Assembly: GCA_001179505.1 (NCBI GenBank)
Contig: CDMY01000908.1
Location: forward strand, 176,672-240,671
DNA from: Vitrella brassicaformis CCMP3155
Taxonomy: Eukaryota > Protista > Chromerida
Reading direction: 5' to 3'
Length of the DNA: 64,000 nt
Positions within the stretch are counted from its first letter, which is position 1. Each line of letters opens with the position of its first letter. Below, piece after piece: positions 1 through 10,229 of the stretch. The translations under genes and the position numbers were made by a program. Under the pieces are notes generated by a model. That model searched no databases. It saw only the letters and a program-made list of their open reading frames with translations, and had not been told where the DNA came from.

Positions 1-1585
1 CCGCCACTCACGCGCAAGCTTGACGACAAAGTCCAGGTGCACAGACACACATGAACGTTCTTGTGTCTTGAGATGCGGATATGTGCGTGTTGTGTGGTGT
101 GCTTGTGCTGTGTGTGTTGGTGTACTGTATGTCAGTTTACGGATTTGTGTGACGAGATGGGACTGCAGGTGCCGGTGGCCTATCGCATCACGTCCAGGAG
201 CCAGCTGCACGAACTCAACAAAATGGACCTCAAGGTACACACGCGCGCACCGAAACACCTCACACATGGACGGATGGATGGATGGATGGTCTTTGGCTGA
301 TTCATGGGTCTGTTCGTGCAGGACGACCGATATGTACTCAAGCACGTCGAGTGAGTCTCACAGACACATGACACAACACAACACCAGTGCGCCGATGCAC
401 ACACGCATCTGTCTGTCTGCTGTCTGGTGCAGGTACGACCCCATGCGCAGATACGACATGTTCACCCTCCCATGCACACCTCAAGAGTAAGCAGACACCT
501 CGCCACGACAACCACACACACACACACACACACATATGCACACACACACATGGATGGATGTAACGCATGCAGGCTGGACAACTATCTGGACACTCGTGAC
601 ATCCACCCGTCCCCGAGCGACCCCTGGCAGGCACAGCAGTGGATCACCGGCACCGAGTACTGCACATGGTCCGTCATACAGGCCGGCAAGGTTCTCCTCC
701 ACACCTGCCACCTCTCATCGCCCGCACAACTCAACTACAAGTACGACGACGTCCCGGAGATCCTCGACTGGACAGAGAAATTCGCCGCGGCCCTCAACAC
801 GGCCGGTGGGTATGCATGTAGCCAGCCATCCACCCATCCATCTGCTCTCCTCTTGTTTGTCAACAGGTCAGTTTTCCCTGGACGTGATAGTGCGTGAGAG
901 CGACGGGGAGTGCTTCGTGATAGAGTGCAACCCCCGGACGCACTCGGCGTGCGTCGCATTCCACGACCAGGCCGCTGCCGTCGGCGAGGTTTTTCTGCAC
1001 GGTACGCTTGTTTGTGGGTGTGTAAGTTACTGCGTCTGATGTGTGAATGCAATGCCTCCATGTCATGTGTGTGCGTATGGGTGCGGTGCATCGATCAGGC
1101 GCGTCTCACTGGACGAAGCCGGAGAACCAGGCCAAGCTGCCCATGCTGCCCAACAAAGACCACACGCACGTCTACTGGGTACATCAATCACACCAACCGC
1201 CCTTACACCCACACACGCAGATCAGATCCCCACTTACTTCGGCCGATGTATTGCATCGGTGTGTGCAGTTGTACCAGGAGGTCATGAAGCTGTGGAAGGT
1301 GCGGTCGTTCCAGCAGCTCGCCGACCGGGTGGCCTTCCTCTCCTCTGGCCGCGACGCCTGGTTCGAGGTGTCTGACCCGCTGCCATTCCTCGCCATCCTC
1401 TACTGGCAGATGCCATGGCGGCTGCTGCAGGTACGCACCCATGTGTGTGTATGTCAACAGGGGTGGGCACAGGTGTTGTGTGTTGTGGGATGTGTGTGTG
1501 GCTGTAGGGTCCGTTGCTGACGGGCAACAGCTGGAGCAAGCTGGAGTGGTGCATCGGCAAAGTGGTTGAGGTCGGCGGCGACTGA
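1..1585 (+). CDS. mysC: Mycosporine-glycine ligase-like ATP-grasp protein (MysC/Ava_3856 family), 5'-partial, multi-exon
   Basis: Spliced exons read LDDKVQ|FTDLCDEMGLQVP...|DDRYVLKHVE|YDPMRRYDMFTLPC...PWQAQQWITGTEYCTWS...SSPAQLNY...GQFSLDVI...FVIECNPRTHSA...YW|LYQEVMKL...DPLPFLAILYWQMPWRLL...WCIGKVVEVGGD*. This follows the cyanobacterial MysC motif series (LDDK-F, YILK-YD, PW-QEFI-G-E-CTHS, IECNPRTHSA, DPLPFL-WQIP, IGKLVELGGD C-terminus). Stop at 1583-1585. Confidence 0.9.
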
Positions 1586-2961
1586 TCGCGTGTGTTCGAA
1601 CTGGAGTCAGTGAGGGCGTGAGGGAGTGCGGGAGAGATGGGTTGTGGTCGGTCCGTGAAGGGTTTTCCTCCCGAGTGACAGCACAGCACAGCATGTGTTG
1701 TGTGGATGAGTGTCGTGTATCACCCCACGCATGCATTGATTGCGTTCATGTGGATGGATGCAAATGTGCGTGTCTTGATGCTCGTGTGTGATGGATGCAT
1801 AGATGGATGGATGGATGGATGGCTAGCTCCCGAAGGGACATGCGCCACGCACCCCCTGCATCATGGCCGTATACACGTGGAAAGGGAGTAGCCGAAAACA
1901 GACAAACGTGAGTCTGTCTCCTACTCTGTCTGTCTGGTGCCGCATGGATGGATGCCCCCCCCTCTCTCTCTCTCTCTGTGTGTGTGTGTGCCTGTCCCTA
2001 CCTGTGTCCTTGTCTGTCTGTCTGTCTGTCTGCCTGCCTTTCTCCTCCATTTCTGAGTGAGTCTCTGTCTGTCGATAGCAAACATGGATCCATCCATGGA
2101 TGACGGCTCACTATCTATTTGTGTGCTGACGCGTGTCGATACGCATTGCATGCAACACGACAGGACAGACAGCCCAGCTCTCTTCTTATAGTGAGAAGAG
2201 GCACACACATACATACATACACTCTCCTCAGCGAGCAGCCAAGCCACCTCGCGCAGTTTTTCGCCATCCCTGTCTGCCTGTCCGTCTGTCTGTGGGTATG
2301 TGTGTGCGACGTGTCTGGAGGCGGGCCGTCACTTTTGTCCTTTTGTCGTGCGTTTGCTGCGTGGGCACGTTTGTCATGCATGAAAGAGAGGGCTCCAGTG
2401 TGCAGCCAGCCGGCACCCGTGAGTGTGGTGTGCGGGGGGATACCTGGGGCTTCGCGTACGTCTGTCTTTCTCCGCATGGGACGATGCGGAGGGAGTGACG
2501 TGTGCTGTGGCCAAGGTGTCCACCACACCGCACACACACAAGGATACTGTACGTGGCATGAGCCTCCCTGGATGCGGGGGGGTTGTTCAGTCCGTCCCTC
2601 ACCGTGGAGGGAGAGTGTCGCATGTCCGTAGTGGAGAGACATTTCCAGCGATGATTTCGTAATGTCGTCATAACTCCCACACAGTGACACCAGCAACCTA
2701 CTCACGATACCGAGACAGCGACAAACAAACGACCAGTGCACGCACAGACGAATAAAACCACGCAACACCCACTCGAGAGAGAGGGTGAGAGAGAGAGCCA
2801 GAGAGGCTTGTGGCTACTCACTCTCTCTCTCTCTCTCTCTGTTCTCTGCCTGTCAATTGGCGTATGAACAGGCAGCTACTCAGTTGGGTTTAAACCGACC
2901 ACATGGCCCCAGCCCACTTGCCCCCCCGCCATCTGTCCATCCATCCATCCCATCCACCTGT

Positions 2962-5070
2962 CTAAATGAGACCCTGTGTGCTGAGCATCATCTCTATTTC
3001 CGACACTCTCTCGCCGTCGGCCAGCGTCAGCATGCGGCCGTCAGACTGGGCGTGGTGCTCGGGCGGCGGGTGTGCCAGCGACTCCCGCATGCTCTGAGTG
3101 ACATACATACCCGTTCGGCACTCACTGAGTGATTCACACGTCTGTCTGTGTCCGTCTCTGTGAGTGTGCATACCTTCAGGTACGGCCAATATCGCGGATT
3201 CAGCACTTGCACCTCCTCTCTCGCCGCCTGGACCTGCGCGTCGGTCACGCCGAGAGCTCCTGCGAGGGTCCAGCCGCCCATCGTGTTGGCGGCCATGTCA
3301 GCACTGAAGTCGAGCAGGTGCTTCCTGAAGATGTCTGTGTACTCGAGGGCCTTCTCCAGCAGACGCTCCTTGACCGTCGAAAACGAGAGATGAGACTGAC
3401 ACACAGGCAGGCAGGCAGGCAGACAGCGCACATGAGCCAGCTGGACAGGGGATTGATTCGTCATGCACCTTTGTGGCCGCCCGCTGGCAAAGCTTGTTCA
3501 CGTACTCCTGGAAGTGGTGCTGCTGCATGAAATGCACGATGTTGCCCTTCCTGCCAGGTATGCAACACACACACACACACACAGATATACACACAGATAC
3601 AAACAGATACACGCGCAGAATGTCAGCAGTGAGCACCGGCATCCTTACAAGTGGTTCCGTTTGAGGAACTGCTCCGACTTGCTCAAATGCACATTCCCCG
3701 TCAGCCCCACTTGCTCAGTGACGTCCTCGCCGAAAAGGCGCATACATGAATGGACGACGGCGTCCGTGCAGATGGTCGGCATGTCAGGCAAGAAATAAAA
3801 GACGAACGTCTTGCCTCCAATCGTGACGGTCGCGGTCTTGTCGGCCCAGAAGAGCATGTCCAGTGGGCTGCGGACCTCGATGAGAGGGTCCAAGATCGGC
3901 AAGTGGCGGGTCTTCTCAAAGTAGCTGAGAATGAGGTCCTCGATCGCCCTCGACGCAGCGCGGACCAGACGGGCCAGCATCGACCGGAGCGAGTCAGGAT
4001 GCAGCTCCGAGAATGGGGTAGTGTCCAGCGACAGGCGGGCGAACCGGAAGGTCGGATAGTCTATCGAATCGTGGAGGGCGCCGCTCCTGCAGGCGTCTTC
4101 CTTGAGTGAATAGACTCTCGCGCCCTTCACAGCACTTGTTGCCTGGCTGTCACGCTCCCCACGCTTCACGTAGCTCAGTAAGCCGATATTGACGTGGCGG
4201 AATCGCGTCAAAACCAGGCCCATCGAGACCTTGGTCAGGGGACGACTTGCCAGCTCGCTGATGATCTGGTCCTCCTTGCGCCGCTGCAGCTCGTAGAACT
4301 CATCCTCGGACATCATCCCGTACACGTACTTGACCGGGGCTTCGTTGTCGTACCGAAAGGCTCCCACATTCGACAGCGTCTTGGCGTCCTTACACACATT
4401 CTTGTGTGCCGCCCTCCAGTGGTTCCGCTGACACTCGAGCGAGCAGTAGCTGACGAGCCGGCATTCGCCGCACGTGGAGAGTGATGGCACTGCAGGCGGC
4501 CCCTTCCCACACATGGCGCAGCGCCGTTCTGTCGGGTAGGCCGCTCTGTCGTCAGAGAGGCGCACCTTGTAGCCACGCATCTCTGACGGCAGCACAGCGG
4601 AAAAAGAGCCAATCAGGGCCTGCGTGCATGCCCTTCCCGCCCTGTCTGCGCGGTGCGCACCAACCCACCTGCAGCGGTGAAGGGCACGTCAGATGCTCCT
4701 GTCACGCGAGGACTGGCCGCAGTCGAACTGGCGGCCGTCGAGTCGGGCTGACTGGCCTCCCTTTGCTGGCTCGCGGGCACCATGTGACCACGCATCTCTG
4801 ACACACACCAAGGACACACTTAATGTCTGTTTTGTGGTCTCGTCTGCGTTTCCACCCCACCCACGGTGACCCACCTGCAGAGGCAGAGGGGAAGGGCACG
4901 TCAGATGATGCCGTCACGCGCTGCTGTTGCTGCTGCTTCTTCTGCTTCTGCTTGTCGAGAGCCATCGCGGCCATCGCTCTGCTGGCAGCCGAAGGTCCTC
5001 CATCGTCGGATGAGTCGCTCGTCGAGTCAAGCTTGTCCCAGCGGCCGTAGTCGATGGGCTTCCCGGACAT
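2962..5070 (-). CDS. MYND zinc-finger protein with N-terminal DYxxWD motif and uncharacterised C-terminal domain
   Basis: Start MSGKPIDYGRWDKLDSTSDS at 5070. The large exon 3650-4590 contains CAMCGK...CGECRLVSYCSLECQRNHWRAAHKNVC (MYND pattern). Further exons KGNIVHFMQQHHF..., KERLLEKALEY..., ...MLSTQGLI* join at GT-AG sites. Confidence 0.75.
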
Positions 5071-5513
5071 TTTGCAGGAGTACAGCAGACAGCGGAGGGA
5101 GATCTCGGCGTGGCGCCACAAGGAATGCAGGGAGCTGGCGGCAGGAACGCAGAAAGACGAAAGTCGACAGGTCAACGCTTCCTGGTCGGAAAAGCAGCCA
5201 ACACCGAGCCGAGGGCCTCCCTTCTGCGATTCTTCAAAGCCTGACATGAACACACACGCAACACACACACGTGCACAACGAGAATGTGTAACTCATCATC
5301 TTTTTCTCTTTCTCATTGGTTCATCTGTGGTCTGTGGGAGTTGCTCACCTCTTTTCTCTGCTGTGGCGATGATTCAAAGCCAGATCGGAAGCCAGTACAC
5401 CTGCTAGCAGGATAGGGCGCGCGAAACCATCGCCAGCAGTCCCGTCCCCTCTCCATTTTCTTCGCTTTTCGGCCTCCCCCTGTCGTGTTTGTGAGCCTTT
5501 TCGCTCCCCCATC

Positions 5514-5554
5514 CTTCGCTCGTCCGCTTCCGCTCGTCCGCTTCCGCTCGTCCC
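5514..5554 (+). repeat. About 3 copies of a 14-bp unit (cttccgctcgtccg) upstream of GAPDH
   Basis: Directly visible: cttcgctcgtccg cttccgctcgtccg cttccgctcgtcc. Confidence 0.8.
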
Positions 5555-5607
5555 TCGCCCAGTCCCTCACCCCGACACACTCGGTCTCCCCTCACACTCA
5601 CACAGAC

Positions 5608-7597
<1,990 letters not shown>

Positions 7598-9088
7598 ACA
7601 GAGGGAGAGGGAGATAGACGCATCGACAGACAGATGCAAACGGAGAGAGAGCGGGAAAGGGAGGGGAAGGGGAAGGGGGAACACACACTCTTATACACAC
7701 ACACTACGTAAACGTATACGTACACATGGCATACGTGAGCGTCCGTCAGTCGATCGATCGTCACTGACCTCTGTCTGCCTCTTTTTCTCCACCTTTTTGA
7801 TCACCCTGCCGCCCTCCCTTCCTGCCTGCCTGCCTGTCCGCCTGCCTGTGTGTCTCTGTTGGTCGTCCTGTAAGAACACACCCACGCTCGTATGTCTCAA
7901 CGCGACCACACAGCACACAGGCAGACCGACTCAGACATGCAGCAGCAGCAGCAGCAGGAAGAATACCTCAATTTTCGACTTGGTAGCGCAGAGAGAGATA
8001 TGATAATGCTTGCGAGGTGACTGCCTGCCCGACCAGTTTTGTCTTTTTTCTCCCCTAGATCAACCGATGGACGACAGAGTGGCTGCCTGCATGTGTGGCG
8101 TGCGCGTGGCTGATTTGGAGTTTGCTTTGCCGACCGACATATAGATGTGTGTGTGAGTGTCAGTCAATCAAGTCAGGGAGAGACATAGCCTGCTTGCCTG
8201 CATCGTTTTTGGGCGAGAATCTGCCCCTTTCACATGCGCCGAGAGTGTTTTGTTTGTTTGTGTGTGAGTGTGAGTGTGCCGAGCCGATGCAAATGAATGA
8301 ACGCGTACATCCGAGTTTAATGAGCGTGAGTGAGTGGCTGAGTGAGCGAGTGAGCATTTCCTCCGTTTGTTTCTTCTCGAGACAGCCAGGTCAGTGAGAC
8401 AGGTCAATGAGCAGCACAGACACACACATGGACTACATCCTACTACCACTGAAAGCGCTCCTCTGCCATTCTTGTGCCTGGTGTCCATCAACCTGAGAGT
8501 CAGAGCGAGGGAGAGAGAGAGAGGGATGCGTGTGTGTCGTGGCCACCATCTGTCTGTCTGCCTGCCTGTCTGTCTGCCTTTTGTGTGTGGTGTGTTGCTG
8601 CATTGCATTTGTTTGCTAAGCCCGCTCGCATGTAGTAGGTGGATGGACGCGCACTTACTTAGCAGGTAGGTAGGAAGATCTCATCATCCCATGCATCTTG
8701 AGTGGCTGGCTGAGTGAGTGGAGTGCACTTGTCCCACCCAACCGACCGGTCCACGTGCGTTCGTTTCAGGTTGTTTGAATCATGCATGGACGCGATGCGT
8801 ACATGGCATGGCTACCTAGATGGATGGATCGATGGAGGCGACCATATCACATCAACAGCAGTGAGGGATGGCAGGACAGGTCAACTGTGGGGTGTAGCGC
8901 CGACCACTCAGCTCGAGTAGCAATGAGTATTCACTTCCACACAGACATGGCGACCTGACTTCTGACGACTCAGTTCACTTCGTCCAATTTGACATACGTG
9001 TTCCACATATATATAGACATACTCATGCTCTCCCTCTCTATGCCACAGACACACAGACACATGCATACACAACACCAGCTAACCACAC

Positions 9089-10229
9089 TCACCCCTCCAC
9101 TGCCTCTCTCGCTTCTCTCGACGTGCTTGACGACAGGTCAAACAGGAAGTCATGCACATACCTCTCAGCCCACTCATGGCCAAAGAAGGCCGCCAGCACC
9201 GGCTGGACCGGGTCTCGTACCGCTGAGTACTCATCGTACCCCCGCTGCATGGCCTCGTTCCGCTCCACAACCGACGTGCTCGAGCACGGTCTCAGAGAGC
9301 CAACCATGTCCAAGTAGGTGGAAAGGTATTCACAGAAGGCAGGAAAGAGCAAAGCAGCCACGTGGCTGGCATCCTCAAAGCGGCCGTACAGCATGCTCGA
9401 GGAGAAGTACCGCTTCTCGTCATAGTGCCTTGCCGACATCCGCCCGGTCAGGCCCACATAGTTGCGATCACGGCTTCGTCGTAGACGCTCAAAGAATGAT
9501 CGGTAGGCGGGTGCGCTCTCCGTGTCTTGAGGGGGAGAGGTAAGCGGCTGTGCGTCGATCACTTGCAGGTACTTGCTGTCGGACAGCTTGATCAGGTCGA
9601 CGCCCAGCAAGGGGGGAGGGATGTCCGCCCCCAAACTAAAGGAAGGGTACCAGAGTGAGTTAAAGACCTCAAATCCCTTAGCACCACTGTCTGCACCGAC
9701 ACAGGTGCCACACACGGATGAGTCGCGCCATGGACGAGTGTGTGGATCGGCGTAGGTCTTTAACACTATGCTGACCGAAATACGTCATCCTGATCTTCCG
9801 AAACTGCTTGGAGCTAAAGCAAGCGCTCGAGATGCGTACATGCGGCCGCCTCGTACCGCTCTCCCCATCGTCCTCCACCACCGTCTTGTCACTCTCCCTC
9901 TGCGCCAGCTCCGGCGGCAACGGGACGCCAGTGAGGCCCTCAAGTGCAGACATCTTCTGCAGCTGCACGGCCACGAATGCATCATACAAGAGCGGGCCGG
10001 ACGAAGGCACCAGGGGCTCCAGTGGGAAGTGGGGCAATGGGACAGAGGAGGGAGTGGTTGAGAGAAAGGGTGCTACCATGGGGGCTCCGGACGGTGTCGC
10101 CGCTGCCTGTGCGGATGGGTGTCTGCGAGGGCAGGGGGAGGCCAAGGGGTGGGAGGGGGTGAAGGCTGACACATGGACGATAAGCACAGCTGAAAAGACG
10201 ATGAGCTGCAGCACCGCGGCCAGCATCAT
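9089..10229 (-). CDS. pebA: Plastid-targeted ferredoxin-dependent bilin reductase (PebA / 15,16-DHBV:ferredoxin oxidoreductase-like)
   Basis: Two exons (intron 9691-9775). Signal peptide ending ...HVSA-F plus an S/P/A-rich transit peptide. Then FRKIRMTYF|DSG...VFNSLWYP...LLGVDLI...VIDAQPL...RYFSSSMLYGRF...LFPAFCEYL...YDEYSAVRDP...FFGHEWAERYVHDFLF, the FDBR motif series. PebA versus other FDBR subfamilies is tentative. Confidence 0.85.

What the first reader, a model, noticed from the sequence alone, without database searches (positions are those of the whole stretch)
1..1585. Intron-rich MysC-type mycosporine-glycine ligase: MAA sunscreen biosynthesis gene in a probable chromerid
Seen: the spliced product carries the full MysC motif series through the diagnostic C-terminal GKVVEVGGD* and has many spliceosomal introns, so it is a naturalised nuclear gene, not bacterial contamination. 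Established: MysC joins glycine to 4-deoxygadusol in the mysABC(D/E) pathway, and eukaryotic MAA genes are often fused (MysA-MysB in dinoflagellates; MysC-MysD in red algae). Here the stop follows GGD directly, so there is no C-terminal MysD fusion. Inference: the missing 5' part upstream of position 1 may be fused to or neighbour DDGS/O-methyltransferase genes.
Basis: partly seen in the sequence, partly recalled or inferred. Interest (0 to 1): 0.72.

Follow-up and report, generated by a model that had tools for sequence, protein, structure and literature searches.

The report
Sunscreen-pathway ligase gene (MysC-type) in Vitrella
The alga Vitrella brassicaformis, a photosynthetic relative of malaria parasites, expresses an intron-rich nuclear gene for a membrane-anchored MysC-type enzyme, the ligase that attaches an amino acid to the ring of mycosporine UV sunscreens. 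Its partner genes lie elsewhere in the genome, and nobody has yet measured the product.

Summary
Window 1-1585 holds the last nine coding segments of a 14-exon, 558-aa nuclear gene of Vitrella brassicaformis CCMP3155. All 13 introns are GT-AG, and spliced transcript contigs from three runs match every junction. The protein is a MysC-family ATP-grasp ligase: NF005315 E 8e-85, 36-42% identity to bacterial homologues that sit in mysABCD clusters, 69 of 82 near-invariant family residues kept, and the family's C-terminal IGKLVExGGD motif.

That part encodes an N-terminal extension of about 150 aa with two hydrophobic stretches. The upstream neighbour is an unrelated divergent methyltransferase. No pathway gene lies within 84 kb.

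Partner genes are dispersed:
- C273: tandem EEVS-like cyclases with a mixed EEVS/DDGS fingerprint, apparently fused to an O-methyltransferase.
- C364: a complete MT-Ox (gadusol-type) gene.
- C646: a MysE-like NRPS.

The protein groups with eukaryotic homologues, including the Coccomyxa ATP-grasp that lies beside EEVS and MT-Ox. The family assignment is therefore solid. The precise reaction (4-deoxygadusol plus glycine) is not established, and a gadusol core or another amino acid remains possible.

This is a new member of a known kind, of moderate interest. The scan also noted this gene in an overlapping window (s1-201888).

The parts
1..36 (+). 3' part of exon 6 (the exon starts at C908:176573, 99 nt upstream of the window); encodes PPLTRKLDDKVQ
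   Evidence: peptide found in P0001 from residue 225. The joint window 36|136 is seen in transcript contigs.
136..234 (+). Exon 7 (33 codons)
   Evidence: NF005315 profile positions 120-147.
322..350 (+). Exon 8 (29 nt)
   Evidence: Joints 234|322 and 350|433.
433..486 (+). Exon 9 (54 nt)
573..805 (+). Exon 10, the largest ATP-grasp exon (77 whole codons)
   Evidence: NF005315 181-250, E 1.3e-14. 100% match to P0001 residues 331-407. Laid piece L001 2073-2304.
867..1001 (+). Exon 11, with the ECNPRTHS catalytic motif
   Evidence: NF005315 254-288, E 5.9e-9. E427 C428 N429 P430 R431 are invariant in the family. Joints.
1099..1178 (+). Exon 12
1269..1430 (+). Exon 13
   Evidence: NF005315 313-360.
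1508..1585 (+). Exon 14 coding part, ending ...IGKVVEVGGD plus TGA (1583-1585)
   Evidence: The family C-terminal consensus is IGKLVExGGD.
1586..1943 (+). 3' UTR (minimum extent)
   Evidence: Transcript contigs of X1, X2 and X7 run to L001 3443, which is window 1943.

Best explanation
This is the 3' two-thirds of the single MysC-family gene of Vitrella brassicaformis. The gene has 14 exons and encodes 558 aa.

The product is an ATP-grasp ligase held at a membrane by an N-terminal hydrophobic region. Residues 42-82 and 96-120 are hydrophobic, and the catalytic body runs from about 150 to 558.

By homology with characterised MysC, it most likely uses ATP to phosphorylate the C3 enol oxygen of a methylated cyclohexenone core (4-deoxygadusol or gadusol). 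The amino group of an amino acid then displaces the phosphate, giving a mycosporine such as mycosporine-glycine.

The core would come from enzymes encoded elsewhere in the genome:
- tandem sedoheptulose-7-phosphate cyclases, apparently fused to an O-methyltransferase, on C273;
- an MT-Ox gene on C364.
A MysE-like NRPS on C646 could add a second amino acid.

Shown here: gene structure, expression, family membership, retention of catalytic residues, the fold, and the presence and position of partner genes.

Inferred: the chemistry, the identity of the core (my odds: 4-deoxygadusol about 0.45, gadusol about 0.3, other for the rest), the amino acid, membrane anchoring, and that the dispersed genes act together.
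For: Gene and expression:
- 13 GT-AG introns, all matched by spliced contigs in three runs from two studies and absent from a DNA run.

Family:
- P0001 against NF005315: E 8e-85, profile positions 3-362 of 389. [quoted passage not shown]
- 36-42% identity over 98-100% of residues 150-558 to cyanobacterial, actinobacterial and alphaproteobacterial homologues. P0086, P0116, P0124 and L110 lie beside cyclase and O-MT genes.
- 69 of 82 columns that are at least 90% conserved in 101 homologues are kept, including K267, K309, E358, D413 and E427-R431.
- The C-terminal motif is kept.
- It is the only such locus in the genome.

Fold:
- AlphaFold model pLDDT 86.3, pTM 0.85. The best PDB matches are PurK, PylC and L-amino-acid ligases.

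Membrane anchor:
- Every bacterial homologue checked has one N-terminal hydrophobic stretch of about 30 aa before the GGK motif. Vitrella has two, and they are modelled as helices.

Partner genes:
- C273 cyclases and O-MT.
- C364 MT-Ox, with PF01596 followed by adh_short, collinear with the Coccomyxa MT-Ox.
- C646 adenylation-domain exons are 54-57% identical over 130 aa to NRPS-like ORFs directly downstream of cyanobacterial MysC.

Mechanism:
- MysC of Anabaena variabilis phosphorylates the C3-OH of 4-deoxygadusol (review PMC10666671).
Against: - No biochemical or metabolite data exist for Vitrella. No paper in the library links chromerids with mycosporines or gadusol.
- The protein is a long branch (1.53 substitutions per site) and scores below NCBIfam's curated cut-off (285 against 406 bits). 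Cluster-embedded bacterial MysCs P0116 (387) and P0156 (402) also fall below it.
- The gene is not linked to any pathway gene.
- The cyclases are closer to EEVS than to DDGS, and their product is unknown.
- MysC homologues are known to accept different amino acids and cores (PMC10666671, PMC7826186).
- The best-scoring cyanobacterial hit, P0082, lies without an adjacent cyclase.
Confidence: 0.8

Rival explanations
1. One reading: a canonical MysC that joins glycine to 4-deoxygadusol made by a DDGS (MysA) and MysB, as in the cyanobacterial mysABC(D/E) pathway. This is a special case of the best explanation.
For: - Family membership.
- A cyclase followed, without an intervening stop, by an O-MT domain lacking an oxidase part, like mysA-mysB.
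- Thr at the ValA His360 position, as in Anabaena DDGS.
- A MysE-like NRPS, whose cyanobacterial relatives act on mycosporine-glycine (PMC10666671).
- A cyanobacterium (Gloeocapsopsis, L110) pairs a ValA-like cyclase with O-MT and MysC.
Against: - The core cyclase exon scores 146.8 bits to EEVS ValA (4P53) against 104 to DDGS (5TPR).
- Its 80 nearest bacterial relatives are ValA-like, and only one of them lies beside MysB and MysC.
- It has Asp at the ValA Asp281 position, where DDGS and cluster MysA have Ala.
- A complete MT-Ox gene exists.
- The ligase groups with the Coccomyxa enzyme of an EEVS/MT-Ox cluster.
- Glycine specificity cannot be read from the sequence.
Confidence: 0.3
2. A ligase of a hybrid, green-alga-like pathway: an EEVS-like cyclase and MT-Ox make gadusol, and this ATP-grasp enzyme attaches an amino acid to give a gadusol-core mycosporine (prasiolin or klebsormidin type). 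This is also a special case of the best explanation.
For: - Vitrella P0001 falls in a 13-row clade of eukaryote-derived sequences (97 UFBoot / 95 SH-aLRT) with Coccomyxa viridis P0167.
- The P0167 gene lies next to MT-Ox and a cyclase.
- Vitrella has a collinear MT-Ox homologue and EEVS-like cyclases.
- The pathway was proposed for green algae in PMC7826186, which also cites engineered 'gadusporines' made with bacterial mysC.
Against: - Vitrella and Coccomyxa are both long branches, and their mutual position inside the clade is unresolved.
- The three Vitrella genes are unlinked.
- The His360 position is Thr in the Vitrella cyclase, not His as in ValA.
- The presence of an O-MT without an oxidase domain and of a MysE-like NRPS points to the classical route as well.
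Confidence: 0.3
3. An ATP-grasp ligase of the same superfamily that has been recruited to a different substrate, unrelated to mycosporines.
For: - The long branch, five non-conservative changes at highly conserved positions (H255C, L319Y, I342P, H524Y, L530R), and a score below the NCBIfam cut-off.
- No linkage to pathway genes.
- Some bacterial homologues, such as P0082, lack an adjacent cyclase.
Against: - The match is full length, and the catalytic and C-terminal motifs are kept.
- No function other than mycosporine formation is known for this family in the sources read.
- All other pathway components are present in the same genome.
Confidence: 0.12
4. Bacterial contamination or an annotation artefact rather than a Vitrella gene.
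For: The nearest named relatives are mostly bacterial.
Against: - 13 spliceosomal introns, confirmed by spliced contigs.
- A 240-kb contig with eukaryotic neighbours, including a MYND-finger gene and a bilin reductase.
- GC content like the rest of the window.
- Placement in a clade of eukaryote-derived sequences.
Confidence: 0.01

Closest known systems
MysC (ATP-grasp ligase Ava_3856 of Anabaena variabilis and cluster-embedded homologues; NCBIfam NF005315 / PRK06849)
   Same: - Same family over the whole catalytic body.
- Same catalytic residues (ECNPR and the conserved Lys, Glu and Asp), same C-terminal IGKLVExGGD motif, and an N-terminal hydrophobic anchor.
- ATP-grasp fold.
   Different: - Only 36-42% identical.
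- About 100 extra N-terminal residues with a second hydrophobic stretch.
- 13 introns.
- Not clustered with cyclase or O-MT genes.
- Substrate untested.
Green-algal MysC-like ATP-grasp of the EEVS / MT-Ox / ATP-grasp neighbourhood (Coccomyxa, Chromochloris, Klebsormidium; PMC7826186)
   Same: - Same eukaryote-dominated clade.
- The same genome content of an EEVS-like cyclase plus MT-Ox.
   Different: - In Vitrella the genes are on three different contigs.
- Vitrella also has a cyclase-O-MT fusion and a MysE-like NRPS.
- About 35% identity to P0167.
Fungal mycosporine ATP-grasp ligase (ATPG of Phaffia rhodozyma; PMC10057719)
   Same: Homologous ATP-grasp. It works after DDGS and O-MT and attaches an amino compound to the ring.
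   Different: Much more distant: 25-28% identity to the fungal homologues P0193-P0196, which serve as the outgroup in the trees.
[quoted passage not shown]
   Same: ATP-grasp superfamily and the same pathway.
   Different: - A different family (PF07478).
- No fusion here.
- No MysD homologue was found in the genome with the Nostocales query, and there is only one weak PF07478 hit.
PurK, PylC and L-amino-acid ligases (nearest solved structures)
   Same: Three-domain ATP-grasp fold (Foldseek E about 1e-13, probability 1.00).
   Different: - 10-16% identity.
- No solved structure is a sequence relative.
- They have no membrane anchor and lack the C-terminal MysC module.

Membership tests
MysC-type ATP-grasp ligases (NF005315 / PRK06849) | Full-length homology to the family profile | tested here: met
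   P0001 E 8e-85, 285 bits, profile positions 3-362 of 389. The exons hit the profile collinearly.
MysC-type ATP-grasp ligases (NF005315 / PRK06849) | Score above NCBIfam's curated equivalog cut-off of 406 bits. This is an operational threshold tuned to cyanobacteria, not a defining trait. | tested here: not met
   Vitrella scores 285 bits. Controls: cluster-embedded P0116 (387) and P0156 (402) also fail; eukaryote-clade members score 165-321; the Coccomyxa cluster member scores 234.
MysC-type ATP-grasp ligases (NF005315 / PRK06849) | Conserved catalytic and ATP/Mg-binding residues and the C-terminal IGKLVExGGD motif | tested here: met
   69 of 82 columns at least 90% conserved are kept. All 17 invariant columns of A3 are present by construction, including K267, K309, E358, D413 and E427-R431. 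The protein ends GKVVEVGGD.
MysC-type ATP-grasp ligases (NF005315 / PRK06849) | ATP-grasp fold | tested here: met
   Model pLDDT 86.3. Foldseek best matches are PurK, PylC and L-amino-acid ligases.
MysC-type ATP-grasp ligases (NF005315 / PRK06849) | Placement inside the family tree among members that lie in mys clusters | tested here: met
   The protein falls inside the ingroup relative to fungal homologues, in a clade of eukaryote-derived sequences (97/95 support). It is a long branch, so the exact position is unsure.
MysC-type ATP-grasp ligases (NF005315 / PRK06849) | Physical clustering with a cyclase and an O-MT. This is a habit of bacterial and some algal genomes, not a defining trait. 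| tested here: not met
   No such gene lies in C908:156672-240671. The neighbours are a Methyltransf_11/25 gene, a MYND-finger gene and others.
MysC-type ATP-grasp ligases (NF005315 / PRK06849) | Core-forming enzymes (sedoheptulose-7-P cyclase plus methyltransferase) occur in the same genome | tested here: met
   C273 cyclases plus O-MT and the C364 MT-Ox.
MysC-type ATP-grasp ligases (NF005315 / PRK06849) | ATP-dependent condensation of 4-deoxygadusol with glycine or another amino acid | not testable with these tools
   This needs an enzyme assay or metabolite analysis.
MysC-MysD or MysA-MysB-type fusion proteins | A second pathway domain in the same reading frame | tested here: not met
   The stop follows directly after GGD, with a 3'UTR behind it. 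The N-terminal 150 aa have no Pfam or NCBIfam domain and are hydrophobic helices.

The most novel reading that the evidence does not exclude
Vitrella runs a dispersed, hybrid sunscreen pathway not described in alveolates. In this reading, mixed-fingerprint cyclases feed both an O-MT domain and an MT-Ox enzyme. The membrane-anchored MysC-type ligase then makes gadusol-core (or both gadusol- and 4-deoxygadusol-core) mycosporines at a membrane surface, and a MysE-like NRPS adds a second amino acid.
Probability: 0.25. Interest if true: 0.6.

Novelty: new member of a known kind. Interest (0 to 1): 0.42.

Why it matters
[quoted passage not shown] In the library searched I found no paper reporting mycosporine or gadusol genes or compounds for them.

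This gene, together with the cyclase, MT-Ox and MysE-like genes elsewhere in the genome, predicts that Vitrella makes UV-screening mycosporines. It also offers a compact, testable set of eukaryotic enzymes.

The mixed EEVS/DDGS cyclase, combined with both an O-MT and an MT-Ox, could help show how the 4-deoxygadusol and gadusol routes are related.

The conserved N-terminal membrane anchor of MysC-family proteins, doubled here, is a practical point for anyone expressing these enzymes.

Tried and rejected
- Pfam on single exons gave almost nothing, only a weak R2K_3 hit. Pfam on the whole protein gave only sub-threshold ATP-grasp hits.
- A PDB sequence search with the largest exon was blank.
- The word search with a MysA/Vitrella-exon alignment (A2) returned only bacterial MysA and did not retrieve the Vitrella cyclase or its eukaryotic kin. 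This step was wasted for classification.
- The protein-atlas search with the cyclase exon was uninformative.
- Kean 2014 and the two Osborn 2017 papers, which hold the cyclase fingerprint tables, are not held. I therefore read the two fingerprint positions from PDB alignments.
- Genomic contexts of eukaryote-clade members P0207 and P0126 showed no pathway neighbours. Cluster look-ups gave few names.
- MysD was not found in the genome with the Nostocales query. The Methyltransf_2-type O-MT of Gloeocapsopsis was not found. PF00668 gave no hit, probably because the exons are short. All three mean only 'not found with this query'.
- Three further cyanobacterial contexts (P0140, P0124, P0117) had no MysE.
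Exons were searched one by one by reference. All whole-protein steps used P0001, the database protein returned, whose identity to the exons was checked piece by piece.
- I rejected bacterial contamination, a fusion with MysD, and a 5' fusion with or adjacency to DDGS or O-MT.
Full report
**What is in the window.** The window is G000:C908:176672-240671, the end of a 240,671-bp contig of a 72.7-Mb, 1064-contig genome. Translating positions 1-1650 in three frames shows nine coding segments on the + strand, separated by short GT-AG introns. They end in ...IGKVVEVGGD followed by TGA at 1583-1585.
- Pfam saw almost nothing in single exons.
- NCBIfam NF005315 (PRK06849, named only 'hypothetical protein') matched four exons collinearly, at profile positions 120-360. 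The best exon scored E 1.3e-14.
- A six-frame search of the whole genome with that model found this locus only. It added one more exon about 500 bp upstream of the window.

**Gene model and expression.** I fetched the upstream 20 kb and read the gene by eye. It has 14 exons: L009 8853-9090, 9173-9403, 9478-9569, 9647-9716, 9793-9833 and 9902-10000 continuing into window 1-36, followed by the eight further window exons listed under parts.
- The total is 1677 nt, or 558 codons plus the stop.
- All 13 introns are GT-AG, 61-99 nt long, with a mean of 81.
- The exhaustive protein search with the largest exon returned P0001. It is 558 aa and 100% identical over residues 331-407.
- Every exon translation lies in order in P0001.
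- Sources name P0001 'unnamed protein product [Vitrella brassicaformis CCMP3155]' and 'ATP-grasp domain-containing protein'. Vitrella is an alveolate of the Colpodellida/Vitrellaceae.
- I laid public contigs on C908:175172-179771. Runs X1, X2 and X7, from two studies, hold contigs of 2.1 kb. These skip exactly the 13 introns: twelve joints are listed and one is implied by the laid pieces. A DNA run is collinear with the genome.
- The transcript spans at least 55 nt of 5'UTR and 358 nt of 3'UTR.
The gene is therefore real, nuclear, spliced and expressed. Contamination is excluded.

**Family.** The word search with residues 150-558 of P0001 gave 121 relatives. The closest are 36-42% identical over 98-100% of the query. 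They are cyanobacterial, actinobacterial and alphaproteobacterial 'ATP-grasp enzymes', with a few eukaryotic entries from Coccomyxa, MMETSP transcripts and fungi.
- Genomic contexts show what these relatives are. P0086 (Nostocales) and P0116 (Rhodospirillaceae) sit in DHQS-like / Methyltransf_3 / ATP-grasp / D-Ala-D-Ala-ligase clusters, that is, mysABCD.
- P0124 (Oculatella) sits after mysA-mysB. The Gloeocapsopsis gene in L110 follows a cyclase and an O-MT.
- P0086 scores 548 bits on NF005315, so that model is in effect the MysC model. P0001 scores 285 bits (E 8e-85), below the curated 406-bit cut-off.
- The cut-off is not a defining line. Cluster-embedded P0116 (387) and Actinomycetospora P0156 (402) also miss it, and eukaryote-clade members score 165-321.
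- Of 82 alignment columns at least 90% conserved in 101 homologues, P0001 keeps 69. These include K267, K309, E358, D413 and the E427-C-N-P-R431 motif. Most of the 13 changes are conservative.
- An AlphaFold model built on that alignment is confident (pLDDT 86.3, pTM 0.85; residues 1-55 are disordered). Its best PDB matches are PurK, PylC and L-amino-acid ligases at 10-16% identity.
- No solved structure is a sequence relative.

**The 5' end and the neighbours.** It is not.
- The first about 150 residues carry no known domain. They contain two hydrophobic stretches (42-82 and 96-120), modelled as helices.
- Every bacterial homologue I checked has one such stretch of about 30 aa just before the GGK motif. 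A membrane anchor therefore looks like a family trait, and it is doubled here.
- The upstream neighbour is transcribed divergently from an intergenic stretch of about 150-200 bp. It is a Methyltransf_11/25-type enzyme, not the Methyltransf_3 family of MysB.
- Downstream lie a MYND-finger gene, a gene that reads like GAPDH, and a ferredoxin-dependent bilin reductase.
- No homologue of MysA, MysB, MysD, a cyclase or MT-Ox lies anywhere in C908:156672-240671.

**Partner genes elsewhere: the C273 cyclases.** PF01761 finds two tandem DHQS-like genes on C273, plus the ordinary DHQS locus on C297. PF01596 finds an O-MT right behind the C273 cyclases, and three other O-MT loci.
- The C273 cyclases are sedoheptulose-7-phosphate-cyclase-like, not DHQS. 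The core exon scores 146.8 bits to EEVS ValA (4P53), 104 to Anabaena DDGS (5TPR) and at most 99 to DHQS.
- The 80 nearest bacterial loci are Streptomyces- and myxobacterial-type ValA relatives at 55-63% identity. Only one of them, from Gloeocapsopsis, lies beside MysB and MysC.
- At the ValA Asp281 position the Vitrella enzymes have Asp, where DDGS and cluster MysA have Ala.
- At the His360 position they have Thr, as DDGS does; ValA-like enzymes have His and the Coccomyxa enzyme has Ala.
- The fingerprint is therefore mixed, and I cannot say what the cyclases make.
- The last cyclase exon runs through three phase-0 GT-AG junctions into the O-MT exons without a stop. This suggests a cyclase-O-MT fusion, on sequence evidence only.

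**Partner genes elsewhere: MT-Ox.** A paper on green-algal gene neighbourhoods (PMC7826186) describes EEVS + MT-Ox + MysC-like ATP-grasp clusters and proposes that they make gadusol-core mycosporines.
- In Coccomyxa viridis the MysC-like P0167 does lie beside an MT-Ox (PF01596 plus adh_short) and a cyclase.
- Using the Coccomyxa exons, I found a collinear MT-Ox homologue in Vitrella on C364, minus strand, at about 70061-72674. PF01596 positions 18-196 are followed by a complete short-chain dehydrogenase domain.
- The C273 O-MT is a paralogue of that methyltransferase domain with the same exon pattern. No oxidase domain lies within C273:118000-135999.

**Phylogeny.** Two trees place Vitrella in a clade of eukaryote-derived sequences. 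The first used 130 rows with the quick method; the second used 55 rows with the careful method under LG+C20+F+G4. The clade contains Coccomyxa, a diatom cluster, a Fabrea-MMETSP cluster and many short environmental transcripts.
- Support is 98 SH-aLRT in the first tree and 97 UFBoot / 95 SH-aLRT in the second.
- Vitrella and Coccomyxa are both long branches, so their exact position inside the clade is unsure.

**Earlier notes of the scan.** After finishing the above I looked these up. They independently list the MT-Ox gene, the tandem cyclase-methyltransferase fusion with its mixed fingerprint, and a 41-exon MysE-like NRPS. The first two agree with what I had found.

**Partial test of the MysE lead.**
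- 57 of 251 sampled cyanobacterial genomes hold the MysC model.
- Of 20 flanks fetched, three have an NRPS-like ORF of 884-1138 aa directly downstream of MysC.
- Adenylation-domain exons on Vitrella C646 match these ORFs at 54-57% identity over 130 aa (155 bits). They match an unrelated NRPS ORF at only 42% over 69 aa.
- I did not examine the rest of that gene.

**Reading.** The family assignment is secure. By homology, the enzyme most likely phosphorylates the C3 enol of a methylated cyclohexenone and lets an amino acid displace the phosphate. That mechanism was shown for Anabaena MysC (PMC10666671).
- Whether the core is 4-deoxygadusol or gadusol cannot be decided from sequence. The classical route is favoured by the cyclase-O-MT arrangement, the Thr fingerprint and the MysE-like NRPS. 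The hybrid route is favoured by the EEVS-like cyclases, MT-Ox and kinship with the Coccomyxa enzyme.
- Which amino acid is used also cannot be decided from sequence.
- No paper in the searched library reports mycosporine or gadusol genes or compounds in chromerids. The library is incomplete.
- This is a new member of a known enzyme family in a lineage where it had not been described, with a dispersed and partly unusual set of partners.

Noticed in passing
G000:C273:122000-128300 (L019 about 4200-10000, L020 1-700), + strand: A tandem array of EEVS-like sedoheptulose-7-P cyclase genes. A 300-N assembly gap cuts the first copy. The last copy runs without a stop through phase-0 GT-AG junctions (L019 8701|8800, 8928|9027, 9152|9242) into a Methyltransf_3 O-MT. 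The active-site fingerprint is mixed: Asp at ValA-281 and Thr at ValA-360.
   Followed up: partly
G000:C364:70061-72674, minus strand (L118 6062-8675): A complete MT-Ox-type gene (PF01596 followed by adh_short), collinear with the Coccomyxa viridis MT-Ox. This is the enzyme type that turns 2-epi-5-epi-valiolone into gadusol in fish.
   Followed up: partly
G000:C646:147171-151831, + strand (L124, L126): NRPS adenylation-domain exons that are 54-57% identical over 130 aa to NRPS-like ORFs directly downstream of MysC in three cyanobacterial genomes (L131, L132, L137). They are much less similar to another NRPS (L136). This is a candidate MysE.
   Followed up: partly
L009 7712-8646, minus strand (C908:174383-175317): A divergently transcribed Methyltransf_11/25-type methyltransferase gene. 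Its start lies about 200 bp from the MysC start codon, so the two probably share a bidirectional promoter. RNA-like contigs leave L001 155-308 almost uncovered.
   Followed up: partly
window 3645-4595 (-), about 5681-7400 (+), 9089-9766 (-): Downstream neighbours: a MYND-finger protein gene (Pfam), an intron-split gene that reads like GAPDH (starts [13 protein letters not shown]; not tested), and a ferredoxin-dependent bilin reductase exon (Pfam E 8e-32).
   Followed up: partly
window 507-560 and 270-290, 1795-1825; many loci genome-wide: Introns and flanks are full of (CA)n/(GT)n and GGAT-type microsatellites. The CA run in the intron at 507-560 matches more than 40 other places in the genome.
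   Followed up: no
P0086, P0116, P0082, P0009, P0010, P0165 and others (MysC homologues): All MysC-family proteins checked carry one N-terminal hydrophobic stretch of about 30 aa, some 15-20 residues before the GGK motif. This suggests that MysC enzymes are membrane-anchored in general. I found no mention of this in the review I read.
   Followed up: partly
L110 5581-10153 (Gloeocapsopsis crepidinum LEGE 06123) and L028 6001-9328: A variant cyanobacterial cluster: a ValA-like cyclase (Asp and His fingerprint), a Methyltransf_3 O-MT, MysC and a Methyltransf_2 O-MT. A second cyanobacterium has MysC with the same Methyltransf_2 O-MT and an MFS transporter, but no adjacent cyclase.
   Followed up: partly
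L029 3253-4617 and L030 3425-5164 (cluster-embedded MysA): These MysA proteins read AIDAGPSPRTC where ValA and Anabaena DDGS have the conserved Lys (IDAGIGAKTG / IDASVAIKVA). Cluster MysA enzymes therefore come in at least two active-site types.
   Followed up: no
L120 5853-9788 and L130 6555-10515: Cyanobacterial loci with two adjacent MysC paralogues (456-459 and 442-443 aa). These lie next to a 2OG-Fe(II) oxygenase (MysH-like) or a MysD-like ligase.
   Followed up: no
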